The position numbers and the translations under genes were made by a program. A DNA stretch of 64,000 nt from Podarcis erhardii (lineage: Eukaryota), in the NCBI GenBank assembly GCA_964252035.1, contig OZ176214.1, one strand, 5' to 3'. The first letter of the stretch is position 1; every line of letters starts with the position of its first letter. This document shows, piece by piece, positions 1,525 to 64,000 of this stretch. The notes beneath the pieces are model-generated. The model had not been told where the DNA came from and did no database searches. It worked only from the letters and a program-made list of their open reading frames with translations.

Positions 1525-4943
<3,419 letters not shown>

Positions 4944-26993: not shown

Positions 26994-27024
<31 letters not shown>

Positions 27025-42000: not shown

Positions 42001-42253
42001 CGTCTATAAGACGCTCCCATGTATAAGACGCCCCCTATTTTTATGGACTTAGATTTAAGAAAATGGGGGAAGATGTGTCTGTGTATAAGATCACCCCTAA
42101 TTTTTGACATTATTTTTAAGAGAAAAAACCTAGTCTTATACACGGAAAAATACGGCGTGTCACAGGAAAAGCATATCATCTGTGACTACAAGTAATTAAA
42201 ATTTGATATTGTGCTTGCATAGACTTCTGAGATGGGTTTCTAAGCGGGTTTTA

Positions 42254-42296
<43 letters not shown>

Positions 42297-45036
42297 CAGT
42301 TTTAAGGTTCTTTCATTAATAGTTTTAGAGTGAAAATGTAGCAAGGAAATGGTGCGTTCATGAGGACCCCCCCACACATTGGAAGGTTCTATAAATGTAA
42401 GGCCCCCCCCCCCCCGTATGGGTGTTCATGTTTACAACATCTTAGTTGATTATCTGTGTATTTCATTCCCGTTTCCTATCAGAGGGCATGCTGGCTGGGG
42501 GCTGATGGGAGTTGTAGTCCATTACACCTATAGGGCCCCAGGTTGGTGAAGGTTGCTGTGCCCTTTCCTATAATAATTTTTATAAAGTTTTCTATTTTAA
42601 ATTTCAAAATAAACATTTTACAAACTGTAAAATATCCAGTCATTTTCCTTCTTTTCCTTCCATGGTTCTTTTTATATATTATACATTCTGGCATATTTTA
42701 GTATACCATTCAAATAAACTTTCCACTTTTACACCCATCAAAAATTATTTACTCTGTTGAATTTATCTCAGTTCTGCCGTCATTTTCAACTGATTGATAT
42801 GCCCTTAACTAAGGCCTAAGTACTGAGCATCTGACATGCATTGTCAGGCACACAAAGGAAGCCACGGGGGGGCGGGGGAGAGAAGGACAAACCAGCTGCT
42901 TTCTCTTAGGGGATCTGGTCCCCTTGGCTTAATCCTGCCCAGGGGTTGTGACAGCCCTCACCACCATTTTGAAATCCCTCTGTTAGGCTTTGAAAGGGTA
43001 TGAAAGGTTGTTTTACTGGATGCATCCCATGATATGGGAAGAGGAATCTCTCTCTTTTTTAAAGAAACCATGAAGATATCAAATGCAGGAAGATTGGAAA
43101 TCTAAATGCAATATAAGCTGTTGTATGAGCTTGTAAACCACTTTTATTTTCCTTAGGTGGGCAATGAGGTCACTTTGGCTTGGGGAGTTGTAGCCGACAA
43201 CATCCAGATGGAAGGTCCCCTCAATCACCCTCCACTGTTATATAGCCTGATGTCATATTCTGACAAACAATAACTATGTTTCTGAAAAGCCTGGATGGCC
43301 AATTATAACACCAATTTCTCTTCCCTTCTCTTCTCGCCCCCCCCCCCACTTCCGCGGACAGAATCCTGATGTAACAAAAGTGAAACTCATTTCCCGTATG
43401 GCGAAGATGGGTCAGCCTATGCTACCTGTCCCCTCCAGCACATTTGCACCCCAGCAAGACTCAGCTGACAAGGAGGTAGAGGTGTGTTAGCTTCAATTCT
43501 CAGGTTTTTTTCAGTGGGGTTTGTGTGTGTTGGCTGTTGCTGAAATTCAGGTAGGTTGGCAGGATGACTGTTGAGGAACATAGCAAGCTGCCTTATACCA
43601 AGTGAGACTGCTCATCCACCTAGCTCCCTACTGTCTACACTAACTGGCAGTGAAGGAGGAGAGGGCCCTTTTTTTTTTACTTAATTACAAACCTACCTGG
43701 TTCTCCAAACTTATTACCAAACTTAAAACCATGGAGAGACCTGGTCTGAACAAAGACATTGGATTCTTATCTCATTATACATGACAAAGCCATTTTTCAC
43801 CTTCTCACCCCTTGCTTTTTCCTGTAAGACCTATTGCAGTTGTTAAGAGTCGTCAACAGGCTCATCACAGCTATCTGCCAATCACCCATTCCCACCACCC
43901 TTCTGAGTAATACCCCTCCCCACCTTCTCACTATATAGAAGGGTCTGGTGACTTCTGTTTCAGTGTATCTGAAGAAGTGTGCATGCACATGAAAGCTCAT
44001 ACCTAGAACTAACTTAGTTGGTCTTTAAGGTGCTACTGGAAGGAAATTTTTTTATTTTGTTTTGGTTCTCCAGGGTTTCACACAGGGGGCATTCCCTGCC
44101 TACCGGGTATCAAACCTGGGGCCCTTTGCATGAAACTGAGGTCTTGCCCTCCCTAGATCTAGTATTCACCCCAAACTGGTTTTGGGTCTGAATCTTAATT
44201 TGAGGGAAAGCCTTGTAAGGATCATCAATCATTTTGTTTGTATGTCGCCTTTCCCAAGTTAAAACAATGCTCAAAGCGGCTTACAACGTATTAAAAAAAA
44301 CCCCATAGCTACAAATGTTCTGGCATGCCTCTCTCTCGTTAATGTGGGATTTGAAGCCTCCAGGGTCCCTTTCCACTTCCCAGGAGGGTTAATTGTGCAT
44401 TGTCTTCTTCAGGAGCCGCATGCCATTCAAGAATTTTCAAACTTCTGTCCGAACGACTACCGTCCAATGGCCCCTCTTCAGTGGGCAACGCAAGGTAAAA
44501 AGTGTGTTCCCTTGTTGTGCCTTGGTGATGGTCACCAACTTGGGTGGCTTCAAAAGAGGGTTAGGCAAGTTCATGGAGGAGAGGGCTGTCAGTGGCCACT
44601 GGCACTGTGGCTGCGCCCTCCCTCCACGGCTGGAGGAAAGAATGTTTCTGAATGCCAGTGACTGGAAACCGCAGGAGGGGAGAGGGCTGTTTGCAGGTTT
44701 CCCATGGGGGGCACCTGGTTGGCCACTGTGAGAAGAGGGTGCCAGACTAGATGGGTCACTGGCCAGATCTGGCAGGGTTCTTCTTGAGTGCAGTGGCTCT
44801 ACTCAGTAGAATTTAGTTGGACACAACCCAGAAGCCAGCATGATGATTATGCATGGAAAGCGGAGGAAATCTGGATGTGTGGGGATGGGGGAGCAGTGTC
44901 CTTCATTTGCTGTAGATCAGCTTGAACAGAGTCTGCATCTGTCACTGGCATTGTGTTTAGATGCTTGAATTAATCTGTTTGTGTGCTGACTCCTCTGGGC
45001 TCCTTTGGGTGGAAATAGAGAGAAACATGTTGATGT

Positions 45037-45086
<50 letters not shown>

Positions 45087-48000
45087 TTGATGGACTGCTT
45101 GTATTGAGATGGGCAACGCTGATGCCTCTGCTTTCTTCCTAGCTCCTCATCCAGCTGTCTCGGGGCTCCAGGTGCCTGCTGCCCCCCAGCCACACCCACC
45201 CCTTGCAAGAACCCCTCAAAACTGTCAGGTAAGGAGTCCTTTGTAGGCAGGGAAAGGTTCTTTCATAGGTTGCCAGGTGAGCCACAACATCATGCTCTGT
45301 TCCCTGGTTTGCTCAAGACAGGGGCATGTGACTAGCAGGCTTGACTAAGTTTCTTCATCCTTTTCTGTCAGTGTCAGGTCTTCATTTGCAAAATAGGGAG
45401 GGTGCAGCATAACCATGTTAGCCTTATTGGAGTTCACCGATTGGGTCTGCATTGCTCCGGGACAGGAGGAAGGAAGTCAAAATGACACCAAGGTTGGTTC
45501 AAAGAAAGAGTTTATTCTGCTCTCCGGATAGCAGAAGGCACTTGCGTGATTAGTCCCCAGCAAGTCCAAAGAAATGACAAGTTTCATGCAGTATATATAT
45601 CCTCCAGGCACCCTCTCCCTCCTTCCAACCACATCAGCCTATGTATGCAGGTTGACATCACATATGTTCCTGCTCTGGTACTCTCAACCATAAAAGGATC
45701 TTCCTTCCTGTACTTCTGACCATAAAAGGGATCTTCCTCTTCCTACTCTTATCTGGGAAGAGGTAATCATCTCCGGGAACATGCTCTGGCGTTTGTTCCC
45801 AGACCTGGGTTTGTGTGTCAGAGTGTGTCCAAGACGTAAGATAAAGCACAGACGTGTCTTCTCTCTGTTCTGTTCTACTACTGGTACAGTGAAGGCCATA
45901 GTTGCCGTCACAACTGATAAAGGAGAGGGCTCTGAGCACCTGTCTATACAGCCGGGCTTTTGTTTATGCATTGAGCTCAGAGCTCAAGTTAATGGATTTT
46001 AGCTAAGGAAAAATAGGGATTTTGGTGCAGTTTCAAACTGCCTGGACAGTCAGTTTGGGGTTTTGGAAACCCATTCCTTCAACCATGAAGGTAATAGCCC
46101 TTCGGTGCAAATCCCAAAAGCACTAGATTAAGAGCTAGCAGCATTCATAGCCTTGGGTTGGAGGGAAGCAGTTTGTTACCGCGGCAGAGGTAGTTTCCAC
46201 CAAATCCAGCGGGGATCTTCTATATATTGGGTGATCTTTAGAAGAATGTAAGAAGAACCTCTGCTGGATGAGGCCAATGGCCAATCTCGCCCAGCATCCT
46301 ATTCAGATGGGGGCACCTCTTCTCAGTGGCTACCTGGATGCCCCAGTGCAAAGTGCACAAACAGTGCCTGCGTGCAAGAGCTCTTTCCCCTCCCCCAGTT
46401 TCCAGCAACTGGCATTCAGAAGCATTCCTCCTTCCAGCCATTAGCTGTCAAGGCCAGTAGCCATCAATAGGCGCCTCCCCCATGGATCTGCCCAATCCTC
46501 TTTTAAAGCTGTCCAAATGGTTGTCCATCGTTGCCTTTTGCAGGAGAGGATCCCTTGCAGTCCTTGGCCTTTGGGTCATCTAGCCCTCGAGAGCAGGCTT
46601 AAGCAATCCTGCTGTTTTAATGGGGGACCTTTTTGCCGTCTGTTTGGTCAGTGTGACAAGTCACCTGACTCTCCTTTCCCTCCCCCACCTGTGTTCTCAG
46701 CCTTATGCAGGGATGCCATATGCTTACCCACAAGTGAGTGCCGCAGTTTCCCAGCTCCAGCCTGTTGGGTTGTGCCCAGCTCCTTTCCAAGGTATGTTCA
46801 AACTGTGCACTATGTAGCTTTGGGAGCTGCTTCCAAACATTAACTTTTTTAAAAAAGCAAAACCCTTTATTAACATTGTTGACAACCCAAAAGTCTGGTA
46901 GCAGGCTTGCCATATATGAAGAAAGCAAACAGAAAATAATAAGAGAAAGGAATGGTGGCACACCAGTATTAATTAAGACACCCATATTTCCCAAACTGGT
47001 ACGGATAGTGAATGTTGAGCATCTACCTCTGTAGCTCAGGAAATGAAATTCTACCTGTTGAGCATTAACTCAGTGAAAGTTAGAAATTCCCCTGTTCAGA
47101 GCATCACAGCCTACTGGATCAGGCCAGTGACCCATGTAGTCCAGCATTTTCTTCTTACAGTGGCCAACCAGATGCCTGTGGGAAACCCACAAGCAGGATC
47201 TTAGCACCTTTCCCTTCCTGTGCTTTTCAGCAGCTGGTATTCAGAAGCATTTATTGCCCCCAATTGTGAAGTCGCAACATGGACATCATGGCTGGTTGCC
47301 ATCAATAGCCTTCTCCTCCTCCGTGAATTTGTCCAATCCTCTTTTAAAGCCATCCAAGTTGGTGGCCATCACTGCCTCCTGAAGTCTGCACTGTGTGAAG
47401 AAGCATTTCCTTTTGCCTTATTCCAGCCGTTTAAAAGCTGGGAATTAGGCAGCTAAATTGCCTTAAAGTCCCCCACCCTAGAAGATTCACGGCTGCTTGT
47501 TAAGATGCTCAAGGACGACTGTGTTCTTTTCTCCCTGCCCTTTCTTATTGGTGTGACCCCTTTCTTCCCGCCCTGTCCACATCTACAGTGGTACCTCGGG
47601 TTAAGTACTTAATTCGTTCTGGAGGTTCGTTCTTAACCTGAAAATGTTCTTAACCTGAAACACCACTTTAGCTAATGGGGCCTCCCGCTGCTGCCATGCT
47701 GCTGCTGCGCAATTTCTGTTCTCATCCTGAAGCAAAGTTCTTAACCCGAGGTACTATTTCTGGGTTAGCGGAGTCTGTAACCTGAACCCAAGGTACCACT
47801 GCATTTGCTTCTGCTGGCAGTCTCATTTTGAAACAACAATAACAAACACAACCTTGCAAAGTTTTCTTTCCTGTCACAGCAGCTGGAGACCTTGGTTCAT
47901 TCCTGCTGACAGAGACCCGGCAGCAGAACACAGAGATCCGCCTGGCCGTTGGGAAGGTGGCTGACAAGATGGACCAGCTGTCAGTCAAGGTAATACAGAA

Positions 48001-51000
48001 CTTTCAGGGTAAAGGTAAAGAGGCCCCTGACCATTAGGTCCAGTCATGACTGACTCTGGGGTTACGGCGCTCATCTCGCTTTATTGGCTGAGGGAGCTTC
48101 CGGTTCATGTGGCCAGCATGACTAAGCCGCTTCTGGTGAACCAGAGCAGTGCACAGAGACGCCGTTTACCTTCCCGCCAGAGCGGTACCTGTTTATCTAC
48201 TTGCACTTTGACATGCTTTCGAACTGCTAGGTTGGCAGGAGCAGTCACCAAGCAACGGGAGCGCACCCCGACCTTCTGATCGGCTAGCCCTAGGCTCTGT
48301 GGTTTTAACCCACAGCGCCACCCATTGGTTTTGTATTGTTGATTATTTTATTTCATAAAAAAACTCAAAGCACTTTACAAAAAGAATAAAACAATAGAAT
48401 TATTAGTAAAAACAATTTAAATATTTTAAAAATTAAAACCAGCGATAAACTAGAAACCTATCAGCATTCTAGAGATCTAAAGAAGCATGTGCCAAAAAGG
48501 GAAAGGCAGTTCCCCATTTACATGGGGTTTGCGTTCTGAGGCACTATGCATGTCAGCCTCCCCCGCACCCCTGAGGGCCAAAACTGGTGCGCCCACAGAT
48601 GGGGAGTTGTCTGTACAGTGAAGGTGCCTGCCTGATATTGATCATTGTTCAACTGTTTTAAGGCTTTTAAACAATTTTGGCATTTTATGTTCATTGTATA
48701 ATACATATATCAGGCAGTATATGCATTTTCTGAAATAATCAATCAATCTACCTTCAGGTTTTGCTTCTGTTTCATAGTGTTGGAGAACTGTATCTAGCTG
48801 CTTTTATAGTAGGCTTGTGAATTGTCTTTTTAATCTCTGATGGGGGGGGGGAGGTTTGGGACTAGGGAAGTTGCTTCAGCTAGGTGGTGGAGCACCTCTT
48901 TGCATGCTGAAGGTTCCATGTTAGCTCCCTAATGTCTCCAGGTAGGACTGGGCGACTCCCCAGTCTGTAAACCCAGGGAGATGCTGCCCGCCAGTGTTGA
49001 CAGCACTGAGCTAGATGGACCCAGTGGTCTGATACTGAGCCAGATTCCTGTGCTCCCAGCAGTTTCTCTCCTTGGCAAGCAAGTGAGCAGCTCAAAGGGC
49101 CCAGGCCTGATCTGGCTTCTTCTCTCCCATGTGCTGATGCTTCAAGCTGCACCTCCTTTTTGTTTTTCCTTTCTCTCCCCACACCCCTTGCAGCTGGAGG
49201 AACTGCGGAAGCAAAACTCTGGCCCCGGTTTGCTGCCAGGCATCTCTTCTGTTACCATGGAAACCTCTATGATCATGAGTAACATCCAGCGTATCCTGCA
49301 GGTAAAGAGCCTGTCTACTTGAGAGCATGAAGACTTTTACCTTGCTTTTACCTTCAGGTGAAGGGTCACAGCTAAGTGGCAGAGCATGTGATTCGCAGGC
49401 AACAGGTCCTGGGTACAGTCCCCAATGGTGTCTCCTGGCAGGGCTGAGAGAGACCCCGTGCCTGAAACCCTGGAGGAGACGCTGCCAGTCAGTGGGGAGC
49501 CTTGGGCACAAATGCTGCCCTGTCCTTCCCTGTTCCTGCTCTGCACCTTCCTTGAGTTCTTTTGGCCAGCTGGAAGTGTCTTTGTTGCTAGCCTGGATGT
49601 GGAGCAATCGGTGTAGAGACTTCTTGTCTCCTGTATTATAGCCACATCTGTTGCTCCACCCACTTTTGTCCCACACCTGGACAGTTGATCCAGAGGCAAG
49701 GCAGCCTTTGGACTGGCAGAGCTTCTTTGCCCCTGTTGTAGGCTACACTGGGCTAGATACACGCAACTATCTGGCTTGAGCTAAGAGAGCTTCCTCTGTT
49801 CCAGTTCCTCTAAGGCTGCACTAGCTATTGGGCTTTTAGTATTGCAGCTCCAGACATCCAGAATGAGTTTCCAGCCCAAATCAGACCAGGGCCTAGTGTG
49901 ACGCTGTTCAGATGCCTCTTGAAAGCATGCTTGCTTTGGAGGGCTTTCCATCCTGAGATGTCACTTATGAAGATCAAGTTTTATACCTGCTGAAATGGTG
50001 TTGTTTTTTAAAGTTGAGTACAATAGATGGGCATATTGTATCAGAGTTTGTGAAATTGATTTTATTCATTCTCAGAGCTTGGATTTCTGTGTTGTTGTTT
50101 GCTTTTACCATGTATCTTGCTTCCATGGCTTCATGCAGTACAGCTGTCTCGCAATTTGCTTACTAAATAAAGTTTACCTAGGAGGCTTGCAAAAGGGGAG
50201 CAGCTCCAAACTGCCCATGTTCTGTCCATGACCATGGCGGAAGACCACAACGATTTCTCTCCTCAAATCTGGGTCCCCGAGAGAGGTTGGGGAAGAGATT
50301 GTGGCTGGAGATTGTGAGAGTTGTAGAGGCTAGGACTGACTCTGACACATTCTGTTTTGCTCTTTGTGCCACAGGAAAATGAGAGGTTGAAACAGGAGAT
50401 CGTTGAGAAGAGCAGCCGCATTGAGGAGCAGAACAAGAAGATTGGTGAACTTATTGACCGCAACCAACGGTGAGGGAGACTCTTGCTCACTTTTAATGCT
50501 CTATGAGAAACAGCTGGTATTTGTGGCTGAAGCCTAAAGCTCAGGTGGCCTGGCTCAATCCCCAGGCACCCCAAGGCTGCTGCCAGTCAAAGTGGACAGT
50601 ACTGGGCTGGATGGACAAATAGAGGAATACAGGAATATAGCCAGTGTGGGGTTCCAGTTAAGAGGGTCGGTCAGAGTAAGATCTGGGAGACCAGGGTTCC
50701 AATCTGATATAAAGGTAAAAACTCTCCTAGGGTGGCTTTTGAAAAGTGAGCTCTACATATAATACTGCCTTGATTTATTTATTTTTACATGAGAGGATGG
50801 AAAGTATCAAATCATGCAAACATTCACCTGTGTAAAAAAACAAATCTCCCCCAGCTATGTGGAGCAAAGCAACCTGTTATCTGAGCAGAGCAACAGCTCA
50901 CTGCAGAGGACCATGGAGCACACCCAGGCAAGGGTCCTACATGCTGAACAGGAGAAGGTAAGCCCTGGCAGTGTGACAGCCACAACAGGAAGGCCAAGTG

Positions 51001-54000
51001 ACTGAGGCTGTGGGGAGGGCAAGTGCTATCCCAGGATCCCGTCCTTGAGTTCACAATCGCTAGTGCAGGTCACTATTCCCCTTTGCTTGCAGGCCAGAAA
51101 TAAGTTACATTTTTGAGCAGCAGCATTAACAAAATACAGTGCTACCTTGGGTTACATACACTTCAAGTTACACTCGCTTCAGGTTACAGACACCGCTAAC
51201 CCAGAAATATTACCTCGGGTTAAGAACACAAATCGTGCAGAAGCGGCGCGACGGCAGCAGCAGGAGGCCTGCAAAGTGATTCTTCAGGTTAAGAACAGTT
51301 TTAGGTTAAGAGCAGACCTCATGAACGAATTAAGTACTTAACCCGAGGTACCACTGTAGAAGAAACAACTGTCTAGGTATACATGCATGTACAGGTAAAA
51401 GATTCATAAGCTTCAGGTAATCCTTTGAAAAGCACCTCAGGTTGAATATGAGAGAACAACAGAATGTCCCTTTAAAATCTAACAGAGTGGTTAAGGAAAA
51501 AAATGCACCACATTGGTCTACAGTAAGATCTCATTGGCTGCATTCACATGCCATGCTAAACTGTGGGTTGGCATGACGTGAGCAAGCACAGTGAACATCG
51601 CCCTCACCTCCTCCTATGCAGCCAAGAAGAAGGGTGTGAGAGTTTCCACTTCTAGGTAACTGCTGCTTCCTCTGTTGTCTGGACTGAGAACAGCCATTAA
51701 TGTTAAGCAGAATAAGTTTCTGAAGTTAGCTTATTGAAACAAACATTTGAAGTTGGTGTGTTTGATATTAACCATAGTTGATGTTAGCTGCAGCTCGTTG
51801 TCCCGGGCAACACAGCAAACCATGGCTAGGCAATAAGTGTCAGGGTTCCTGGGCGCATGAGAGGAGGAGATGTAAGGGGAGAGCACGCAGGTCCAGGTTG
51901 GCTGTGGCCTGTTCTTGCTTGGGCATCGGCGTGCAAACTCTGCCATTAAGGGATCTTCCGTGCATCTTACCCTGAGGCCGCTGGGATTTTGAGTGATATA
52001 ATCAGCCCTTGGACCACAGAATAAGCAGAGTGTGCTTAGCCCCAGAATGCCATTGCCTCTTTTGATAAAACTTTCTCCCCTCTTGCTGTTCTTGCTTCTG
52101 GTGGTGTTAACTCTCCTCTCCTTGTCGCCGCTTTTCTCCCTAGCACATGCCGCCACTGGATCAGGGGTGGGACCAGGTGAGGCATTGTCCTTGGGTGTCC
52201 TGATTACCTGAGCACTTCCTTACTCCCTTCATACTTTCCAGGTCACCATTTCATACTTTTAGCAGGCGAAAACCCCACGCCTTCTGCAGGTGTCTCTCGT
52301 TGCGAAGCCTCTCTGTGCTTTGGCATCCCAGCTTCAGGGACAATGGGTTTTCCTAAATCAGTTGTGGGGGGACTCCAGGACCCTGGACCAAAGGCCACCT
52401 TCCAGGCCTATGTGTCTGGCCCTCAAAACTCCTTCCAAGCCACGCACCCTCACCAGTCCTACATTGCACCCTCCTTGAGTGCTTTTGCCTGGCTGGATCA
52501 GGCCCAAAGCCTGTCTTATTCTCACAACCAGATGTCCCAAAAGGGAATTCTACAAGCAGGATCTGCGCTCACCCCACTTGCAATTCCCAGGAACAGCATG
52601 CTGCCTCCAACGGTGGAGGGAGACCTTGTGGCTGCTGGCTGTGGATAGCTTTTCCTGCTCCATTGCTAAAGCCATCCAACTTGGTGGCCTTCATTCCATC
52701 TTGTGGGAGAGAGCTCTGCTGTGTGAAGATGTCCTTTCTTTTGTCTGTCCTGAATTTTCTGGGGAAATCTTTTCTGCTCTCCATTTTATGCACCTTTGTC
52801 GTGCATGCTTTCTCCTGAACTAACTAAAAAGCCCAAGGCTTCTGCCTCCCCCCGCTCCTCATAGCCTTGCCAGTAGACCAGTTCTGCAGGGTGTTTCCTG
52901 GGAGACTCATTTTTAGCATTTGGGAGCCTCCAAAAGCACAGCTCTTGCATCCTCCCAGGAAAGGTCTTGTGGCTCTCCTTCCCCATATGTTCTCCTGTCT
53001 CTTCTGCTCCTTTGCGTTGCAGGTCAGGGTCACCAAGGAGCTAGCGGAAGCCACGGCGCAGATCTCCCAGCTCCAGCTGGAGCTGACCCATCATCAGAAG
53101 CAGGAGATAGATCTCCACTCCCAATTGAATGAAGCCCTGACAGAGTCGGAGAGGCAAAAAGCCCAGGTCAACCTACTGCATGCACAGCTGGCAGGTAAGG
53201 GAAGCTGAGAGGAGGCTCTGAAACGGCAGAAGAGCACGATCCAAGCACGTGCAGAGTAGTTTTATCATCCTAGGAAATTCTTTAGCTTGCAGGTAGGGAG
53301 CCTGTGGCCCTCCAAGTATTACTGGCCTTCACTTCTCATGAGCCCTAGCAAGCATAGGCAGGGATGATGGGCGTTGGAGTCCAGCAACCTCTGGAGGTCC
53401 TGCTCCTTAGGGCCTCCTGCAGTGTAGCTGTTAAAAACTCAGACACACAATCTCCAAAAAAGACTCTTGACTTTAATTCCATCCTTTTAAAAAGGGCAAG
53501 CTTCTGATCTCTACAAACTTGATTGATTGTATTTGTATGCTGTTTTTTGTTGAAATGAATCTCCAGCTTACAAACAATAAGTAACATTAACATAATGTAA
53601 CATAATAGAAAATGGGTTTGTGCAGATTCTGCACCTTCCTTGCCCTGCATGCAAGAGCAGAGCGGTGTAAGAGTGAGAAGAAACATGTGATATGTCTATA
53701 AATGCCATGATCATCACAATTATAACAAATAAAGGCTTGACATATCTCTCTTTGCATGTCATTAGTTATCTCATATATTAGTTTCACCTTTTAAGTTGAA
53801 TTACTGAAATAAATGAACTTTTCCACCTGTATGTCTTTAAAGTTACACGGAGGCCCCATCCACACTATACAGCGTTATCATGGCACTGCAGTCAGTCATG
53901 GCTTTCTCCCAAGGAATCCTGGGAAGTGTGGTTCGTTCCAGCTGCCAATAGTTGTGTAGAAGTGGAGAGCCCTGCTTAAGCAGCCATTTCCAGCATAGAT

Positions 54001-57000
54001 TAACAGTCTGGGAATTGTAGCTGGGGGTGGTGGCAGACCGGGGGTCCCACCACCTCTCAGCACCCTTAAGAGAATGTTCCCATTTCCCAGAATGGTTTGT
54101 GGGAAGCTGTGCGTGTTTGACGCATATAGTGCAGATGGCGCTGTACTTAGGCTTAGCTACAACAGTGGATGGAAACAAGGGCATGCACTGTAACTGGCTT
54201 TGTGCCCCACCTCCACAGAACTTCAGAAATCGTCTGATGACATGAAAAGCAGATACCAGGAGGAGAAGCTGAGTGGGAAGAAGTTGGATGAGAAGGTGAC
54301 AGCCCTGGAAGAGGAGCTGGCTGATATCCGCATTAAGAAGGAGAATCTGGAGAAGGTAGTGCCCAGGGGTGGCAAAAGTCATCACCCGAGGCCAGAAGTG
54401 GCTCCCTGGAAAACTCTCTCTGACCCTTAGGATTCTCCCAGTGCCATACCCCTCCCCCTCTCCCCCATCTTTGCACCCTTGATCATTCTTTGCTTCCCTG
54501 GAAGATCTAATAATAATAATTATGATGATAATGATGAAATAATCTATATCCCGCCCATCTGACTGGGCTTCTTCTTTCATTCTTAAATGGAGGATTGAAA
54601 GGGACAAGTGGGGAAATTAACATATGTTGCTCCACCTACCTTTACTCTTAGCAGGCGGCCCCCAAGAGGTCAGTCAGTGGAGTGGAGTCTGTTAGGCAAA
54701 CAGGGCACTTCCCTCACCCAGCCACCACTTGCTTGCCTTCTTCCTTACAGCCAATCAGGATGTGGCTCTGCCTGTCATTGGGCTCCTTGCCTTCTGCCCC
54801 ACCCACCTCAATGGGCAGGAGCCACCTGTCCTTGGAACACCTCTGCTCACTCTGCTGGCTTCTCATGTCTGCCGTAGGTCTCTGCTTACTGTTTATTACA
54901 GGGGCTCCTGAACTGTGGTCTGCGGACCACCACTAGTTAATGCTGGTTTTCTTCTAGCTTTCCCTGCTTAAAACCACAAGAAGCTCAGAGAACGAGAAGC
55001 TGTCACCACAGCAGGAACAGCCAGAGCCTGTGAAAGGCAAGGTCAGTGGGGCTCTCTTAAAACGTCTTGATGGAGGGTCTGCGGTTCTAACGTGTCCCAC
55101 AGGCTTGTTACACATCTGTGCTGTGAGCCAGTGTGATGCTGTGTACTAATGCAGAGACTGAACTGCATTACTGTATATAGAGCTTAGCATTAGCTGAAAA
55201 AGCAACTCATAAATTATATGTTGTCAAAGGCTAGAGGACCCTGAAAAATTCTATGCAGGCAGCTGGGTGGGATTTTACCTTGTATACAATCTGTAGAGAG
55301 AGACTGGACTCCCTGTCCATAGTACAGTGTGAAATGTGGCTTGCCAAATTGGTCCCAAACTTTTGGAAGGGCACCAGGTTGGCAGAGGCAACAGCAGTTA
55401 ACAATACTTTAAAACAGTTTACAGTCTCACAAATAAGGTATCTCCTAAAAATACACACAGATGTGTTCCTCTCTCTGTAACAAACCCTGAAGTGCTCTTG
55501 AAATAAGAAATGTTAAGGAAAGTCGCGGGGCGCAAGCAGTAGAGAGAAATCTTAGTCACATTCAGCAAAAGCAATGGCAAACCACACTTCTGTAACTTCA
55601 ATCGGGAGTTCTTACCTGTTAGTCTGAACAGCACAATTCAATGCCATCCATTGCTTGGCACGTAGATGCTATCCAGATAATGTATGTTCCTTGTAAAATA
55701 AATGAATAAATGAAATCATCACCACATTTGGCTGTCCAGAAACTCTTGAAAGCCCACTGTCCTTGCTGGTGTTGCTTCCCTGCCTTCTGACTCTTTGGCA
55801 TCATCCTGCCCCAGGTGAAGAAGATCATGAACGAGGTCTTCCAGTGCCTGCGGGGCCAGTTCAACTTGGAGGAGTCCTATACCGGCCAGGAGGTCCTGGG
55901 TATCGTCCTGAACGCCATCAAGGTACAGCCCAGGGCAGATGGATCCTGACACTTGAATAAGATGAAATTGAGTGAACTGATCTATCATTTCTCTTCCTTT
56001 TTGTATGGTTCCAAATGTCATGAGTTTGGGTGCCAGAGTTTTGGGTGCAAGATGCCCATAACTACTGGGTTTAGTAAGTGTTAGAATTTAATCACTGCTT
56101 GGAGAGTGAAACTGAAAGTCAGGCGCTTAACAGCTGGACTCAGCTTCCTGTGTTGAGGAGATCGCTTGAGAGGTGGGCCATTAGAGAACTAATAATGAAG
56201 ATGATGATGATGATTTTGTTTATACCCAGCCACTCTGGGTGGCTTCCAACACATATATAAAACATAGTCAAACATTAAACATCTTTAAAAAATGGAACAC
56301 TTCACCAATTTGCAGAGGCCATGCTAACCTCTTTATCGATCCAATTTTAGTATACAGTATGTGCTGCAGACAGAAAGATGGGCCATCAGCAAGACAGACA
56401 CTCTGCCAGCCAGCAGATGGGTGAAGCCCCACCCAGAGCTTTGAGATAGTGAGTTTGAAGAGAGTGCCAAAGTTTTGGTTAGGAGGAAGTTTTAGGATTT
56501 CAGTTGGCTATGGTGTGATCAAAAGAAAAAAGGCTTTCAGTCTGTTAAATGCAGCAAGCTGGAGAGGCAGGATCAGAGCACAATGCAGACTGACAGTTTG
56601 AATTAGAGGTTGCAGCAATGGGAAAAATGGGACTCTCTTGGAGTGTATGCTGGGGGCCCCCTCCATTACAGGCTCAGGCGTAAATAAACTATATATCATT
56701 ATGACACCACAGTCTACACTGTGCCTCATTTCCAAAGGAAACACAGACTAAGTGCCTAGACCCCTGGAATCTTCCACCGGTCAGAGACTGGGGTGGCATT
56801 TAGCCCCATATTTCTAATCATGGGAGCAGCAAAGAGGGTGAAGCCCAGCTCTCTAGAAATAACAGGTTGCATCTAAGGTACTACAAAGTGAAAGTCACTT
56901 AGCTGTGCCTGTGTGGCTGAGTAGGGATTCAAACCCTGGTCTCCTGAGTCCTGGTTAGAGACCAACCATTACACAGTACTTTCATCAGGGGCTGCAGTCT

Positions 57001-59345
57001 TTTTTGTGGCAAATAATCCCCCCTCCCCTCTACTTGTTCCAGACAACAACTCTGCAGCTGCTGGAGAGTCAGGAGGAACAAAGGGGGAGCAGCAGCACCG
57101 AGGAGGAAGAAACTGCGGAAAGGAAGCAGCCAAGTGCCGCACCCCTTTATGGGGATCCCCACAGCAACTCTCTCCGAGAACCAGCACCAGTGGCATCCCC
57201 CGCTCCTTTGGCTAATCTGAAGGAAAGCTCAAGCAGTCCGCCATTCACCACTCTCAAAGGAGCCCAAGACAGACTGCTTTTTGCAGCTCCTGAGGCTCAT
57301 TCTTCGGAAGCACCGGTTGAACAAACTCGTGCAGCCTCTGCTCAAACTGCAAGGCCGCCTCTCAGGCTCTCCGCCAGTATTGAGAAGGAGAGGCCAAGCA
57401 CTCAGGGAGAAATGGACACAATAGACACCGCCATTATGGCACCTCCAAATCCAGCGGCGGATGAGACGGCATCTGCAATGGAGGGGCCCACAAGGGATCC
57501 AGAGGGCAAGGAGGAGAGTGGGGCAAATCAGCACACCGCTGGCCCCACCTCTCAAGCTGCTCTAGCCGACAAGCAGCAGGACCTGGCTGGAGCCTCACAG
57601 CCAAGACCAGCGTCCAGCCCCATGGAAGCAGATTCCAGGTCTGTGGCAGGGCGGGAGGGGGACAGGAACTGTACCCATTATGAGTCTCTTGCCTTTCCGT
57701 GCCTTCCCCCCACCCCCTAATAGCATGGGGTTTCAGGCACAAAGGAAGAGCCTGGCTCCCCCTTGTTGGGTGATAACGCCGAGGCCTGTTGCCTCCCCCC
57801 AACTGCAGCGTCGCCTGGGATTCATTCCTCGGGTCTCCCATCACACTGATGTGGCCCATATCCAGGGACATGAGCACACAGTGAGCAGAATTCAAAACAG
57901 ACGCTCAGCCTTCAGTAGTAACATCTAAACCTAATTTATTGCAAATTAAATCAAACAGAACAGATAAATAAAACATGGCTCCTCTCTCTGTCTTTATTCC
58001 TCGGAGAGAGAGCGGCAAAAAACAAAAGCTATACAGAGCGGAAACAGCATATCTCAACTTCCTCTCACAAGACTCCCACAATCAGTGCTGGAATGTAAAC
58101 AGACATGTGACATGTAGCAATCCCACACACATCTGCAGTACGGGAGGAATGGAATTCTCAACACCCCTCTGCTCCATTCATTGACATCAGTGCTAGCACT
58201 CTCCCACTCCCTCATTTAACCCCCACATCAACCCTATAAGGTAGGCACTACCCAATGAGCTTCAGGACTGAGTAGAGATTTGAACTCTGGTCTCCCAGGG
58301 TTCTGGTCCGTTAACCACTGCATCACTCCCACTCTCCTTTTCCTTCTGTCTTTTTCTCTTGCAGTCTTCTTGAGGACAAGGGTGGTTTCTTCAAAGTTGC
58401 CACTCCCAAGCCATCTGCACTGGGAACTCTGTTGGTAGAAGATGACGACGACGAGGAAGAGGTGGTAAGAGCTTTGAGGGGGTGCAGTGGTGTATGGTGC
58501 CATTTGGGATGGCTTAAGGTGGAAGGCATAGGTAAAGGTATAGGGACCCCTGACCATTAGGTCCAGTCGTGGCCGACTCGGGTTGCGGCGCTCATCTCAC
58601 TTTATTGGCCGAGGGAGCCGGCGTACAGCTTCCGGGTCATGTGGCCAGCATGACAAAGCCGCTTCTGGCAAACCAGAGCAGCGCACGGAAACGCCATTTA
58701 CCTTCCCGCCAGAGCGGTACCTATTTATCTACTTGCATTTTGACATGCTTTCAAACTGCTAGGTTGGCAGGAGCAGGGACCGAGCAACGGGAGCTCACCT
58801 CGTGGTGGGGATTCGAACCGCCAACCTTCTGATTGGCAAGCCCTAGGCTCTGTGGTTTAACCCGCAGCGCCACCCATAGAGGCCCTCAATAGGTGTTTGA
58901 TAAACTAAAGTGGTGGTATTTTGTTACCAGGGCACCACCAATCTTTCCTCTGGCTGTTAGGGGCGCTATATTGTTATGGTTTTGTGGCATGTTCACTTTA
59001 TTAGGGTCAATGTCCACTATTCAATACTAACAATAGCTGGAGCCATAGCCACTGACAGGCAGCAGAGCCAACTACTTCCAGTTTTGTCCTCTTCCTCCCT
59101 GCTGAGTCCCACAAGGGGCAACCTTGCGACTTACTAGGAGGAAGCTAGAGCCCACATCCTTGTCTTCCTTTTCCCGCTTGCCTTGCTGATGGTCCTGTTC
59201 AGCTGGCCACCTGCTCTGCCAAGCAGCGATGACATATCCCTGCCTTTCTTTCTCTCGGTTTCAGAGCCTTAAGGGTCGGCCTCCCCCCACCCCACTCTTT
59301 GATGATGATGACGATGACAACGATGACCTATACCTGCTGGGATGA
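24799..59345 (+). CDS. FKBP15: FK506-binding protein 15 (WAFL), copy 1; 26 coding exons, 3174 nt = 1057 aa + stop (1087 aa from the upstream ATG at 24709)
   Basis: All 26 exons join in frame with GT-AG ends. Recognisable motifs: RLASLFG, PKQPKKGQ, FYDDQRQNWSIMFESE (WH1-like), VFDS/KVIKGWEDGM (FKBP domain), KLISRMAKMGQPMLP, METSMIMSNIQRI, ENERLKQEI, VKKIMN, KGRPPPTPLFDDDD. Confidence 0.96.
24950..25128 (+). repeat. G-rich 18-bp minisatellite, ~10 units (consensus gctgtatgtggggctggg)
   Basis: Units read directly; lies ~95 bp into FKBP15 intron 1. Confidence 0.9.
27450..27615 (+). mobile_element. tRNA-derived squamate SINE (Squam3-like; family name inferred). Other copies at ~16110-16290(-), 26540-26975(+, split by a MITE), 34270-34450(+), 37400-37560(-), 43560-43690(-), 48880-49040
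   Basis: tgctttgcatgcagaaggtcc..gttcaatccc (B-box-like) head and ..ggcagcttcttatgttcct tail repeated across the window. Confidence 0.75.
28520..29040 (+). mobile_element. L1-like LINE 3' end, inserted in a Penelope-like fragment (~28465-29190)
   Basis: IRDQGEESVEEDWRKFKDYL remnant, T-rich 3' UTR, aataaa and A-rich tail; same family as the 3' end of 37781..39999. Confidence 0.8.
30280..30560 (+). mobile_element. L2-type LINE 3' end
   Basis: ..FSVAAPKLWNSLP.. remnant. Confidence 0.7.
31670..31945 (+). mobile_element. CR1-type LINE 3' end
   Basis: gataatatgatagaagtttatcaaatt...ggccaccaacttgggtgactttaaaagaggattag, typical of this tail; a related - strand piece lies at ~52640-52800. Confidence 0.75.
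32202..32318 (+). mobile_element. Sauria SINE, 3'-truncated
   Basis: ggtaaaggggcccctgaccattaggtccagtcg...gccagcat. Confidence 0.9.
32508..32617 (+). CDS. FKBP15: FKBP15 exon 2 (TRLASLFGQDQ...PKQPKKGQLAT)
   Basis: cccag|G ... G|gtaagt; 110 nt. Confidence 0.95.
32989..33124 (+). CDS. FKBP15: FKBP15 exon 3 (Ala-rich...FATAVHAYL)
   Basis: ctgcag| ... TT|gtgagt; 136 nt; alternative in-frame acceptor at 32983. Confidence 0.9.
33908..33977 (+). CDS. FKBP15: FKBP15 exon 4 (TNGKYVKHGKYGAAVVGSNATKE)
   Basis: ttccag| ... GAG|gtaaga; 70 nt. Confidence 0.95.
35271..35345 (+). CDS. FKBP15: FKBP15 exon 5 (YRVLLYISKQQQIATARIDAWFVFT)
   Basis: atccag| ... ACG|gtaagc; 75 nt. Confidence 0.95.
36143..36215. 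repeat. Short hairpin repeat (ctcagagtagac.cactgaaattaat..attaatttca..ggtct.ctctgag); other copies at ~2775, 9437, 18320
   Basis: Recurrent imperfect palindrome. Confidence 0.6.
36333..36431 (+). CDS. FKBP15: FKBP15 exon 6 (VQPNNYCTFYDDQRQNWSIMFESE...KQ)
   Basis: ccgcag| ... CAG|gtgcca; 99 nt. Confidence 0.96.
36713..36862 (+). CDS. FKBP15: FKBP15 exon 7 (LCIAKYNS...ITFTGWLFQNGSLGQ)
   Basis: tcacag| ... CAG|gtgaga; 150 nt. Confidence 0.95.
37666..37734 (+). CDS. FKBP15: FKBP15 exon 8 (VFDSNVNKEKLLRLKLGSGKVIK)
   Basis: gaacag| ... AAG|gtaaga; 69 nt. Confidence 0.96.
37781..39999 (-). mobile_element. Internally deleted L1-like element (5' UTR + ORF1 + last codons of ORF2 + 3' UTR)
   Basis: CpG-rich 5' end (ggggacttccgg..); ORF1-like frame ~39088->38348 with one TAG at 38948-38950; LMDYRELADMTGRIRDQGEESVEEDWKKFKDYL follows directly; candidate TSD tgtttt at 37775-37780 and 40000-40005. 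Confidence 0.82.
40775..40918 (+). CDS. FKBP15: FKBP15 exon 9 (GWEDGMIGMKRGG...LAFEVQVKR)
   Basis: ttgaag| ... CGG|gtgagt; 144 nt. Confidence 0.95.
41068..41210 (+). CDS. FKBP15: FKBP15 exon 10 (VRFAKGADS...PKP)
   Basis: ccttag| ... GG|gtgaga; 143 nt. Confidence 0.92.
41742..41790 (+). CDS. FKBP15: FKBP15 exon 11 (EPAVRAKSSSISEQLA)
   Basis: ctgcag|G ... GCG|gtaagt; 49 nt. Confidence 0.93.
41990..42155. mobile_element. Short pogo-type MITE related to 12804..13416, in opposite orientation
   Basis: TIR cagtatttttccgt/acggaaaaatacgg. Confidence 0.78.
42254..42295. repeat. (AAT)n microsatellite
   Basis: Read directly. Confidence 0.97.
43362..43481 (+). CDS. FKBP15: FKBP15 exon 12 (NPDVTKVKLISRMAKMGQPMLP...EVE)
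   Basis: ggacag| ... GAG|gtgtgt; 120 nt. Confidence 0.92.
43700..44050. mobile_element. Penelope-like element fragment
   Basis: Ends in gtatctgaagaagtgtgcatgcac..ttagttggtctttaaggtgctactggaagg, the same terminus as at 18.5 and 29.1 kb. Confidence 0.75.
44413..44494 (+). CDS. FKBP15: FKBP15 exon 13 (EPHAIQEFSNF...WATQ)
   Basis: cttcag| ... G|gtaaaa; 82 nt; poorly conserved, chosen because it supplies the required phase 0 to phase 1 bridge. Confidence 0.72.
45031..45091. repeat. (GAT)n microsatellite
   Basis: Read directly. Confidence 0.97.
45143..45228 (+). CDS. FKBP15: FKBP15 exon 14 (APHPAVSGLQVP...QNCQ)
   Basis: tcctag| ... CAG|gtaagg; 86 nt; resembles human APQPSVTGLQ. Confidence 0.82.
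46701..46791 (+). CDS. FKBP15: FKBP15 exon 15 (PYAGMPYAYPQ...PFQ)
   Basis: tctcag| ... G|gtatgt; 91 nt. Confidence 0.92.
47586..47801 (+). mobile_element. Tc1/mariner-type MITE
   Basis: TIR cagtggtacctcgggtt/aacccaaggtaccactg; TA on the left, CA on the right. Confidence 0.85.
47880..47989 (+). CDS. FKBP15: FKBP15 exon 16 (AGDLGSFLLTETRQQNTEIRLAVGKVADKMDQLSVK)
   Basis: tcacag|cag NAGNAG acceptor ... AAG|gtaata; 110 or 107 nt. Confidence 0.93.
48008..48322 (+). mobile_element. Sauria SINE, near full length with small internal deletions
   Basis: Aligns to 58531..58874. Confidence 0.93.
49194..49301 (+). CDS. FKBP15: FKBP15 exon 17 (LEELRKQ...METSMIMSNIQRILQ)
   Basis: ttgcag| ... CAG|gtaaag; 108 nt. 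Confidence 0.95.
50375..50469 (+). CDS. FKBP15: FKBP15 exon 18 (ENERLKQEIVEK...RNQR)
   Basis: ccacag| ... CG|gtgagg; 95 nt. Confidence 0.95.
50855..50957 (+). CDS. FKBP15: FKBP15 exon 19 (YVEQSNLL...RVLHAEQEK)
   Basis: ccccag|C ... AAG|gtaagc; 103 nt. Confidence 0.95.
51137..51356 (-). mobile_element. Tc1/mariner-type MITE, inverted copy of 47586..47801
   Basis: TA on both sides; the reverse complement begins cagtggtacctcgggttaagtacttaattcgttc. Confidence 0.87.
53023..53194 (+). CDS. FKBP15: FKBP15 exon 20 (VRVTKELAEATAQ...AQLA)
   Basis: ttgcag| ... G|gtaagg; 172 nt. Confidence 0.94.
54219..54355 (+). CDS. FKBP15: FKBP15 exon 21 (ELQKSSDD...LEEELADIRIKKENLEK)
   Basis: ccacag| ... AAG|gtagtg; 137 nt. 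Confidence 0.94.
54958..55041 (+). CDS. FKBP15: FKBP15 exon 22 (LSLLKTTRSSENEKLSPQQEQPEPVKGK)
   Basis: ttttcttctag| ... AAG|gtcagt; 84 nt, phase 0/0, stop-free; weakly conserved. Confidence 0.72.
55815..55922 (+). CDS. FKBP15: FKBP15 exon 23 (VKKIMNEVFQCLRGQF...NAIK)
   Basis: ccccag| ... AAG|gtacag; 108 nt. Confidence 0.95.
57043..57638 (+). CDS. FKBP15: FKBP15 exon 24, large low-complexity acidic/Pro-rich exon (TTTLQLLESQEE...EADS)
   Basis: ttccag| ... AG|gtctgt; 596 nt inside ORF 57004..57720; phase matches the next exon. Confidence 0.88.
58365..58464 (+). CDS. FKBP15: FKBP15 exon 25 (LLEDKGGFFKVAT...DDDDEEEV)
   Basis: ttgcag|T ... GTG|gtaaga; 100 nt. Confidence 0.9.
58531..58874 (+). 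mobile_element. Sauria SINE, full length
   Basis: ggtaaagg..gggacccctgaccattaggtccagtcg ... gggattcgaaccgcc ... cagcgccacc; matches the lacertid-type consensus as I recall it. Confidence 0.94.
59265..59345 (+). CDS. FKBP15: FKBP15 last exon (SLKGRPPPTPLFDDDDDDNDDLYLLG*)
   Basis: tttcag| acceptor; TGA at 59343-59345. Confidence 0.95.
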   Translation, partial: SLKGRPPPTPLFDDDDDDNDDLYLLG

Positions 59346-63100: not shown

Positions 63101-63174
63101 GGTAGTTGGTTTTCAGCGAGCCAGCCAGCTAGGATTTGAATGAGTACAAAGAATTTGAATCTACTGTTTCTGGT

Positions 63175-63486
63175 AACAGTGATACCATCCTCGCAAAAAC
63201 GGACTGGCAAGCAAAAATGATAGAAGATCTACAACTTGCCAGAACAACAGGGAGAATAGGAGGAAATTCAATACCAAAAGTTAATCGAGATCGGATAATA
63301 TTTAAGGAAGATTTTAAAAATTAGTGACGACGTTAATCTCCTGACAGACCTAGAATGAATCTTGGAATATGGAGAATGTACATAGTAAAAGTTCATGGAT
63401 ATAACACGAGAAGGCTAAATAAGAAGAAAGAAATGTGTTTTGCCAGACAAAGCGTAAAGAGCACAATGAGAAGAATCGGAAGTTAG
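63175..63486 (+). mobile_element. L1-like 3' fragment at the duplication junction
   Basis: ..TDWQAKMIEDLQLARTTGRI..FKEDFK* resembles the ORF2 C-terminus seen in the other L1 ends in this window. Confidence 0.55.
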
Positions 63487-64000
63487 CTACCTGCGCCTTC
63501 CTCGCCTTCTGCTCCTTCCCTCCATCTCCTCAGACGCGTCCCTTCTTCGCCCGGCGAGCGGAGGCGCCACCTCATTGGCCAGCCTCGAGCGAGCGTCACC
63601 CGCCCTCCCGCCTCCCTCTCCCAGAAACCAGCTTCCCATTGGTCCAGCCGTGTCCCCCTCCCTTTCCGTCAAACTTAAGAGTCCCGCCGCCAAATTCACG
63701 GCTGCGGCAGCAGCTGATCGCTCGTGTTGCCCTGGACGCGTTTCTTCCCTCCGCGTGCAAGTTTGGCCCGTTTGGGGACCGCGAATGCCGCCGGCCGCTT
63801 TGGCTTGCTAGTCTCGCTTCCGCAGCGCAGCGCTTGCGCCATGGCCGAGAAGTTGCAGCCGCGCACTTTGCGGCTCTCGCCTCCCGGCTCGGGCTTAGCC
63901 GAGGGGCGCGGGGAGCGAGGGGCCGTCAGGATGTTGGGGGACATGGATGAAGAAGAAGACGACGCCTTCCAGCTTCCGACGGGAGGGTGAGAATGCGGCG
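63487..64000. promoter_or_regulatory. Second CpG island: duplicate of the SLC31A1/FKBP15 bidirectional promoter (paralog of 24356..24868)
   Basis: Direct alignment to 24356-24868 in the same orientation; runs off the window end. Confidence 0.95.
63931..63986 (+). CDS. FKBP15: FKBP15 exon 1, second tandem copy (partial; gene continues beyond the window)
   Basis: Identical to 24799..24854 including the GG|gtgaga donor; upstream in-frame ATG at 63841 also identical. Whether the rest of the gene is intact cannot be seen. Confidence 0.85.

What the first reader, a model, noticed from the sequence alone, without database searches (positions are those of the whole stretch)
63487..63700. Orphan copy of SLC31A1 exon 1 with its splice donor: possible distal CTR1 promoter or FKBP15 antisense transcript
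Seen: homology between the copies stops 3-4 nt past the CTR1 exon-1 donor (CAG|gtaggc in copy 1, CAG|gtagct in copy 2), and this exon segment differs by only ~7 substitutions over ~158 bp. Inference: leftward transcription from the second promoter would run antisense through all of FKBP15 copy 1 and could splice to the SLC31A1 acceptor at 4986 (intron ~58.5 kb). That would give CTR1 a second, differently regulated first exon with FKBP15 copy 1 nested antisense in its intron. Caveat: the copy-2 donor lacks the +5 G and is weaker.
Basis: inference. Interest (0 to 1): 0.72.

Follow-up and report, generated by a model that had tools for sequence, protein, structure and literature searches.

The report
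Leftover copper-transporter first exon in duplication
A second copy of the first exon and promoter of the copper-transporter gene SLC31A1 really sits at 63.5 kb, but it is a by-product of a wall-lizard (Podarcis) tandem amplification of the neighbouring gene FKBP15, and nothing yet shows that it feeds the copper transporter.

Summary
Window 63487-64000 is a diverged copy of 24355-24868: SLC31A1/CTR1 exon 1, a bidirectional CpG-island promoter and FKBP15 exon 1. There are 7 substitutions over 159 nt of the exon part. The donor is CAG|GTAGCT in the copy and CAG|GTAGGC in the original.

The window comes from a Podarcis lizard. The copy is real and not an assembly artefact: it keeps two ancestral segments that copy 1 has lost, and P. 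lilfordi carries the same relic four times (at least 5 tandem FKBP15 units). P. raffonei has the same duplication junction. The sampled Lacerta agilis locus does not.

The true duplication breakpoint is not at the donor. FKBP15 3' flank is joined to CTR1 intron 1 at window 21221, 3.1 kb from the donor, with TGCT microhomology. Homology stops at donor +4 because of a later LINE-associated rearrangement, and 63130-63174 is a 45-nt remnant of that intron.

All relic copies keep the GT donor, the CCAAT and GC boxes and CpG o/e of about 1. They have lost an E-box. The donor is weaker than copy 1's but matches L. agilis's in U1 pairing.

My best reading is a promoter relic that gives at most divergent non-coding transcripts. 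A real distal CTR1 promoter is unlikely (about 10%).

The scan had already noted this duplication (s1-220633).

The parts
63491..63645 (-). Orphan copy of SLC31A1/CTR1 exon 1 (non-coding first exon). The last exon base is 63491. The upstream limit (TSS) is unknown, so 63645 is only the end of ungapped homology.
   Evidence: 7 substitutions in 159 nt against 24355-24513. The peptide of the L. agilis exon-1-initiated model P0125 maps to 24361-24453 and to 63493-63582.
63487..63490 (-). The first four intron bases (GTAG) kept after the orphan donor. Positions +5 and +6 (CT) already belong to the LINE-derived flank.
   Evidence: The sequence is identical in all four P. lilfordi relics.
63175..63486 (+). 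3' part of a LINE fragment (ORF2 C-terminal, zf-RVT-like) that abuts the donor and replaces the proximal CTR1 intron sequence.
   Evidence: It is collinear with a 1.09-kb piece in P. lilfordi (L004:8557-9647) and weakly similar to an L. agilis element at L003:30105-30694. The atlas look-alikes of the L. agilis ORF are zf-RVT clusters, score 0.97. Pfam itself gave no hit.
63130..63174 (+). 45-nt remnant of CTR1 intron 1, equal to 21906-21950. It shows that the duplicated unit once carried intron sequence.
   Evidence: 44 of 45 identical to the window and L. agilis intron. P. lilfordi units keep 125-730 nt of the same intron stretch here.
63646..63785 (.). Central part of the duplicated bidirectional CpG-island promoter. 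It keeps two ancestral segments that copy 1 has lost (10 nt and 9 nt). It has its own 19-nt deletion, which removes the E-box CACGTG, and it gains a second inverted CCAAT at 63574.
   Evidence: Alignments A2, A3 and A4 with L. agilis, P. raffonei and P. lilfordi. Motif scan. CpG o/e 0.85-1.2.
63786..63987 (+). FKBP15 exon 1 of the second unit: 5' UTR, ATG at 63841, donor after 63987. It is identical to copy 1.
   Evidence: 100% identity over 215 nt. tblastn of P0130 residues 1-48 matches 63841-63987 and 24709-24855.
24359..24513 (-). Original CTR1 exon 1 (copy 1), donor CAG|GTAGGC. The flanking intron is orthologous to L. agilis.
   Evidence: The L. agilis model P0125 maps here.
4722..4986 (-). 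The ORF that contains CTR1 exon 2, from the acceptor at 4986 down to the ORF's stop codon at 4722. Exon 2 itself is shorter: it carries the start codon and its donor lies near 4808, after the methionine run (inferred from the translation; the donor was not checked).
   Evidence: The N-terminal 45 residues (MSNHH ... MMMMM) are identical to the Podarcis CTR1 protein P0121.
21221..21221 (.). Proximal breakpoint of the tandem duplication unit, inside CTR1 intron 1 and 3.1 kb from the exon 1 donor.
   Evidence: The junction (FKBP15 3' flank ending GGCCTGCT, joined to TGCTCCCTTCATC of the intron) occurs three times in P. lilfordi and once in P. raffonei. It is absent in L. agilis.
24709..59345 (+). 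FKBP15 copy 1 coding range. It lies between the orphan exon and CTR1 exon 2, on the opposite strand.
   Evidence: tblastn of P0130; stop codon at 59343-59345.

Best explanation
The stretch is the CTR1-facing half of a bidirectional CpG-island promoter, together with CTR1's non-coding exon 1. It was carried along passively when FKBP15 was tandemly amplified in the Podarcis lineage.

Shown:
- The unit runs from CTR1 intron 1 (window 21221) through exon 1, the promoter and FKBP15 to about 52 nt beyond the equivalent of window 63132.
- Units are joined head to tail at a TGCT microhomology.
- In the founder of the extra units, a LINE insertion and/or deletion replaced the intron right up to donor position +4. 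That is why homology seems to stop at the splice site.
- Later deletions left only 45 nt of the intron in this window.
- Gene conversion with copy 1 keeps the FKBP15 exon 1 side identical and has touched the CTR1 exon side as well.

Inferred:
- The island has kept its CpGs, CCAAT and GC boxes and the GT donor in five relic copies of two species. It is therefore probably still an unmethylated, active promoter that drives the FKBP15-like paralogue.
- Like other CpG-island promoters it probably also fires leftwards. That would give short or unstable divergent transcripts, or at most a minor spliced non-coding RNA antisense to the 3' flank of FKBP15 copy 1.
- Productive splicing over 58.5 kb to CTR1 exon 2 is possible in principle, but it is probably rare and not needed for CTR1 expression.
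For: Structure:
- Repeat and alignment of the two copies.
- The L. agilis intron next to the donor matches copy 1, not copy 2. Copy 2 keeps 10-nt and 9-nt segments present in L. agilis but deleted in copy 1.
- Four further relics in P. lilfordi (L004:9647, L004:36585, L007:9546, L007:44832) share the same flank, donor, 19-nt deletion and derived substitutions.
- The junction with TGCT microhomology is present in P. lilfordi and P. raffonei. L. agilis instead runs on into unrelated DNA.
- The flank is LINE-derived.

Gene conversion:
- The window's copies 1 and 2 share an extra GAA codon and a C in FKBP15 exon 1, and a TG in the CTR1 exon, against the state in the other genomes compared (the TG site is deleted in L. 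agilis).

State of the promoter:
- CpG counts are identical in copies 1 and 2 (14, 15 and 26 in the three segments). CpG o/e is about 1 in all relics.
- CCAAT and GC boxes are kept.
- The U1 duplex is -7.7 kcal/mol for the orphan donor, against -7.2 for the L. agilis donor used in model P0125.

Background: CpG-island promoters initiate in both directions, and the antisense transcripts mostly terminate early (PMC11230626, abstract).
Against: - No RNA evidence of any kind could be obtained, so the claim of weak or unproductive leftward transcription is inference.
- There is no AATAAA or ATTAAA on the - strand for 3.3 kb after the orphan donor. About 2.4 would be expected by my own rough estimate from base composition (not a tool result), so this is not significant. 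An intact 5' splice site favours elongation rather than early termination.
- The exon part of the relic diverges 3.2-3.8% between species. The functional copy 1 exon diverges 5.8% between the window species and P. raffonei. Lack of constraint therefore cannot be used against function.
- The central promoter of the relics is 17-21% from copy 1, twice the distance from copy 1 to L. agilis. A purely passive history does not explain this.
Confidence: 0.7

Rival explanations
1. Distal alternative promoter and first exon of SLC31A1. Transcripts start at the relic, run 58.5 kb antisense through FKBP15 copy 1 and splice 63491->4986. This would give CTR1 a second, differently regulated 5' UTR. With several relics in a row, the array would work like a variable-first-exon cluster.
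For: - Same strand and order as the CTR1 exon 2 acceptor. That acceptor is strong and is the first bona fide internal exon downstream.
- The GT donor is kept in all five relics, with U1 pairing no worse than a working orthologous donor.
- The CpG island is kept.
- No canonical poly(A) hexamer for 3.3 kb downstream.
- The regulatory content differs from copy 1: the E-box is lost and a second CCAAT is gained.
Against:
- The transcript would have to cross a convergently transcribed 35-kb gene and the copy 1 promoter.
- The break at +4 is a rearrangement scar, not a sign of selection for the exon.
- In this window the relic gained an ATG in frame with the CTR1 ORF. That would add an arginine-rich extension to an extracellular N-terminus. 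P. lilfordi lacks this ATG, so the reading is not conserved.
- No Podarcis CTR1 protein with a relic-derived N-terminus appears in the 90% cluster.
- No RNA test was possible.
Confidence: 0.1
2. First exon of a spliced long non-coding RNA. The relic donor would splice to cryptic acceptors in the LINE and intron remnants or in the FKBP15 3' flank. The RNA might modulate the upstream FKBP15 unit by antisense or convergent transcription.
For: Intact donor and CpG island. A PAS-poor first 3.3 kb. The arrangement is repeated in every unit of the P. lilfordi array.
Against: No transcript evidence. The sequence downstream of the donor differs between unit types through large deletions, so no conserved second exon is apparent.
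Confidence: 0.15
3. Assembly artefact: a falsely duplicated or haplotype-derived copy of the promoter.
For: 100% identity of the last 215 nt up to the window end. This could look like a collapsed or duplicated assembly segment.
Against: - The copy is 13% diverged overall, with three indels and unrelated left flanks.
- It retains ancestral segments absent from copy 1.
- The same relic and junctions are found in independent assemblies of P. lilfordi and P. raffonei.
Confidence: 0.02

Closest known systems
Microhomology-mediated tandem segmental duplication that carries a neighbour's promoter and first exon (orphan first-exon relic)
   Same: Head-to-tail units, a 4-nt microhomology at the junction, copy-number differences between related species, later deletions and a LINE insertion inside units, and gene conversion between units.
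   Different: Every unit carries the first exon and donor of the neighbouring gene, and all relics point towards that gene's remaining exons. The homology break coincides to within 4 nt with the splice donor because of a secondary rearrangement.
Variable-first-exon clusters (UGT1A, clustered protocadherins; from general knowledge)
   Same: A tandem series of promoter plus first exon with a 5' splice site, all upstream of one common acceptor on the same strand.
   Different: Here the first exons are non-coding. They are separated by whole or partial FKBP15 paralogues transcribed in the opposite direction. No use of the relics has been shown.
Divergent (upstream antisense) transcription from bidirectional CpG-island promoters (PMC11230626)
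   Same: A TATA-less, CpG-rich promoter with CCAAT and GC boxes that natively drives two head-to-head genes. The duplicated copy keeps both halves.
   Different: The antisense side still has a genuine first exon and 5' splice site. That should favour elongation more than at an ordinary promoter with upstream antisense RNA.

Membership tests
Tandem segmental duplication | Head-to-tail repetition of a unit with a recurrent junction | tested here: met
   The junction between FKBP15 3' flank and CTR1 intron 1 (window 21221) occurs three times in P. lilfordi and once in P. raffonei. Unit spacing is 27-39 kb.
Tandem segmental duplication | The single-copy state in an outgroup shows both unjoined parental sequences | tested here: met
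   The L. agilis FKBP15 3' flank continues into unrelated DNA after GGCCTGCT. Its CTR1 intron 1 holds the other parental sequence. Loss of extra units by unequal crossing-over in L. agilis cannot be excluded.
Tandem segmental duplication | Real in the genome rather than an assembly artefact | tested here: met
   The relic keeps ancestral indel states lost in copy 1. The same structure is seen in two other species' assemblies. Reads for this species were not available.
Alternative first exon / promoter of SLC31A1 | Intact 5' splice site on the gene's strand, upstream of the common acceptor | tested here: met
   CAG|GTAGCT at 63491/63490; acceptor at 4986. It is weaker than copy 1.
Alternative first exon / promoter of SLC31A1 | Transcription initiation at the element | not testable with these tools
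The only indirect evidence is the retained CpG island and core motifs.
Alternative first exon / promoter of SLC31A1 | Junction reads or cDNAs joining the element to exon 2 | not testable with these tools
   No reads. No Podarcis protein model with a relic-derived N-terminus in the CTR1 90% cluster. This is weak evidence, because 5' UTR variants do not change the protein.
Bidirectional CpG-island promoter | Two head-to-head genes less than 1 kb apart within a CpG island (GC > 0.5, o/e > 0.6) | tested here: met
   In copy 1 the exon-1 uATG is at 24453 and the FKBP15 ATG at 24709. GC is 0.61-0.71 and o/e 0.85-1.2 in both copies.
Processed (RNA-mediated) copy of exon 1 | Homology limited to transcribed, spliced sequence, with no promoter or intron | tested here: not met
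   The copy includes the untranscribed intergenic promoter, four intron bases and a remnant of intron 1. P. lilfordi units keep up to about 1.3 kb of intron.
LINE (non-LTR retrotransposon) fragment as left flank | Similarity to the ORF2 C-terminal zinc-knuckle region | tested here: inconclusive
   Translated similarity to an L. agilis element with a 292-aa ORF. Atlas look-alikes are zf-RVT clusters, score 0.97. Pfam gave no hit at E <= 0.01.

The most novel reading that the evidence does not exclude
In Podarcis, the array of relic first exons (one per FKBP15 unit, all pointing at SLC31A1 exon 2) works as a set of alternative, differently regulated CTR1 promoters. Alternatively, it produces antisense RNAs that tune expression of the amplified FKBP15 paralogues. 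Either way, a variable-first-exon-like system would have been born recently by tandem duplication.
Probability: 0.1. Interest if true: 0.6.

Novelty: new member of a known kind. Interest (0 to 1): 0.3.

Why it matters
If the relics are silent or give only divergent noise, this is an ordinary scar of segmental duplication. It is still a clean worked example: the breakpoint is resolved to a 4-nt microhomology, followed by a secondary LINE rearrangement and gene conversion.

If they are used, Podarcis would show how tandem duplication of a bidirectional promoter can give a housekeeping copper importer extra first exons and place a paralogue antisense inside its intron. That is a young, testable model for the origin of alternative promoters.

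The lineage-specific FKBP15 amplification (at least 5 units in P. lilfordi) also matters for annotation. The gene models there merge partial units.

Tried and rejected

2. An SLC31A2 gene next to the relic. I suspected one from weak collinear hits. I rejected the idea: the hits had E = 8 and there is no CTR-like ORF.

3. Word search with the large FKBP15 exon ORF. It gave nothing, because full-length FKBP15 lies outside the tool's length window. The representative search then gave one hit, P0130.

Exon ORFs were searched singly by reference, and that joined step is left out.

5. Look-ups of P0133 and P0140 failed, because they are not the longest product on record.

6. Pfam on the LINE-like ORF gave no family.

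7. Using the between-species substitution rate as a test of constraint. I rejected this because the functional copy 1 exon diverges just as fast.

8. PAS depletion after the donor is not significant.

9. Literature. No paper in the library mentions FKBP15 together with Podarcis, and none treats the FKBP15/SLC31A1 promoter.

Full report
**What is there**

The window holds SLC31A1/CTR1 on the - strand. Exon 2, with the ATG, begins at the acceptor at 4986. A later CTR1 exon lies in the ORF 3046-3501. FKBP15 is on the + strand, with CDS 24709-59345. The two genes are head to head at a CpG island at 24.36-24.87 kb.

A second copy of that island lies at 63487-64000, 39132 nt to the right. It has three parts:
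- A CTR1 exon-1 part with 7 substitutions in 159 nt.
- A central promoter part that is much more diverged and has three indels.
- An FKBP15 exon-1 part that is identical over the last 215 nt up to the window end.

On the - strand the donors read CAG|GTAGGC in copy 1 and CAG|GTAGCT in copy 2. Contiguous homology ends at intron position +4.

**Source and comparative material**

The exon 2 peptide is identical to the Podarcis CTR1 protein P0121. The window is 92-98% identical to loci from P. muralis (L001), P. lilfordi (L002, L004, L007) and P. raffonei (L005). It is therefore a further Podarcis species.

The Lacerta agilis CTR1 model P0125 starts its CDS inside exon 1. Its locus L003 gave the orthologous promoter, and L006 gave the whole L. 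agilis FKBP15 with 10 kb downstream.

I searched exon ORFs one by one by reference.

**The copy is real and old**

- The L. agilis intron next to the donor matches copy 1 and not copy 2, so copy 1 is the ancestral locus.
- Copy 2 keeps a 10-nt and a 9-nt segment that L. agilis has and copy 1 has lost. P. raffonei copy 1 shares the 10-nt loss. Copy 2 also has its own 19-nt deletion.
- P. lilfordi carries four further copies of the relic (L004:9647, L004:36585, L007:9546, L007:44832). All have the same left flank, the same donor GTAGCT, the same 19-nt deletion and the same derived substitutions as the window's copy 2.
- P. lilfordi thus has at least 5 tandem FKBP15 units. The extra ones are partial. 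The annotated 816-aa model merges units 2 and 3, and the others are 795 and 778 aa.

An assembly artefact is excluded for practical purposes.

**Where the duplication was really cut**

In P. lilfordi (three times) and P. raffonei (once), the FKBP15 3' flank ends in GGCCTGCT and is followed by TGCTCCCTTCATC. That second sequence is CTR1 intron 1 at window 21221, 3.1 kb from the exon 1 donor. The overlap TGCT is a 4-nt microhomology.

L. agilis has both parental sequences unjoined. After GGCCTGCT its sequence runs on into DNA unrelated to any Podarcis unit. The unit therefore originally carried about 3.1 kb of CTR1 intron 1.

**Why homology stops at the donor**

In P. lilfordi units 2 and 5, the intron pieces equivalent to 21221-21848 and 23237-23710 are followed by a 1.09-kb piece, and that piece abuts donor position +4. 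Its translation resembles the C-terminal part of an ORF in an L. agilis repeat. The atlas look-alikes of that ORF are zf-RVT clusters of chordates, score 0.97, although Pfam itself gave no hit. I read this piece as a LINE fragment on the + strand.

The window's 63175-63486 is the last 312 nt of that piece. 63130-63174 is a 45-nt remnant of intron 1, equal to 21906-21950 in 44 of 45 positions and identical in L. agilis. P. lilfordi units 3 and 4 share exactly this shortened arrangement. At least two unit types therefore existed before these species split.

The coincidence of the homology break with the splice site is a secondary LINE-associated insertion and/or deletion in the founder of the extra units. 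It is not a duplication cut at the exon, and it is not an RNA-mediated copy. The copy includes untranscribed promoter and intron sequence.

**Concerted evolution**

- In FKBP15 exon 1 the window's two copies share an extra GAA codon and a C, where L. agilis and all P. lilfordi relics have the other state.
- In the CTR1 exon part the window's two copies share TG, where P. raffonei copy 1 and the P. lilfordi relics have GC.

Gene conversion between copy 1 and the relic therefore goes on. It explains the 100% block at the window end.

**Is the relic likely to work as a promoter or first exon?**

What follows is indirect.

In favour of activity:
- CpG counts in the three segments are the same in copies 1 and 2 (14, 15, 26), and o/e is about 1 in all five relics. 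This argues against germline methylation over the few per cent of divergence since the species split.
- An inverted CCAAT, a GC box and the CGTCA motifs are kept, and a second inverted CCAAT is gained.
- The GT donor is kept everywhere.
- Its U1 duplex (-7.7 kcal/mol) equals that of the L. agilis donor used in model P0125 (-7.2).
- No AATAAA or ATTAAA occurs on the - strand for 3.3 kb after it, though this is not significant.

Against a real CTR1 role:
- All relics lost the E-box CACGTG.
- The transcript would have to cross the convergently transcribed FKBP15 copy 1 and the copy 1 promoter.
- P. lilfordi has four relics, so the farthest would need an intron of more than 150 kb.
- The in-frame ATG that the window's relic gained is absent in P. 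lilfordi.

Between-species divergence of the relic exon (3.2-3.8%) is at the intron level. The functional copy 1 exon diverges 5.8% between the window species and P. raffonei, so this measure says nothing either way.

**Unexplained**

The central promoter of the relics is 17-21% from copy 1. That is twice the distance from copy 1 to L. agilis (8-10%), and the changes come in clusters. Either the founder relic changed in a burst, through complex mutations or a shift in regulation, or the duplication predates the Podarcis-Lacerta split and L. agilis lost its extra units by unequal crossing-over.

**Verdict**

The structure is explained as a promoter-plus-first-exon relic inside a Podarcis tandem FKBP15 amplification. 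The proposed function as a distal CTR1 promoter is untested and, on balance, unlikely (about 0.1). A divergent or spliced non-coding transcript from an active FKBP15-like promoter is the most likely output.

The library holds no paper that mentions FKBP15 together with Podarcis. General background on bidirectional initiation comes from PMC11230626.

Noticed in passing
window 11461-11511 (- strand): This is the homologue of the alternative 5' coding exon of the Zootoca vivipara CTR1 isoform X1 (MNSSGVPHLSLAG...). It lies in CTR1 intron 1. In this window the start codon reads I instead of M. Lacertid CTR1 therefore already has another alternative 5' exon, outside the duplicated unit.
   Followed up: partly
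window 63646-63785 versus 24514-24653: The central promoter of the relics is 17-21% diverged from copy 1, twice the distance from copy 1 to L. agilis. The changes are clustered and include a 19-nt deletion that removes the E-box CACGTG (24650 in copy 1).
   Followed up: partly
window 63523-63525 (- strand ATG): In this species only, the relic gained an ATG (EEMEG where copy 1 and L. agilis have EEVE). It is in frame with the CTR1 ORF across the hypothetical 63491->4986 junction. The relic also lost the upstream ATG that copy 1 and L. agilis share (MLASEV, 24453).
   Followed up: partly
L004 and L007 (P. lilfordi OX395140.1, 37.43-37.54 Mb): There are at least five tandem FKBP15 units. Units 2-5 lack different sets of exons. 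The annotated 816-aa 'FKBP15-like' model joins the 5' exons of unit 2 to the 3' exons of unit 3.
   Followed up: partly
window 24709-59345; L006: The single-copy L. agilis FKBP15 is 1064 aa and Podarcis copy 1 is 1097-1107 aa, against about 1180-1250 aa in other squamates. A shorter FKBP15 may therefore be a lacertid-wide feature rather than a loss specific to 'copy 1', as the scan note s1-220699 suggests.
   Followed up: no
window 62798-62848 and 62963-63011: A local direct repeat of about 51 nt (82% identity), just left of the unit end.
   Followed up: no
window 18479-18729, 29097-29196, 43963-44062; 32201-32285, 48013-48270, 58536-58802: Two interspersed repeat families (SINE-like), in direct and inverted copies, including a perfect 81-nt inverted pair at 18480-18560 / 18646-18726.
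   Followed up: no
L003:29261-31072 (L. agilis CTR1 intron): An L. agilis-specific 1.8-kb insertion relative to the window. It carries a 292-aa ORF of LINE ORF2 C-terminal type and belongs to the same repeat family as the fragment next to the relic donor.
   Followed up: partly
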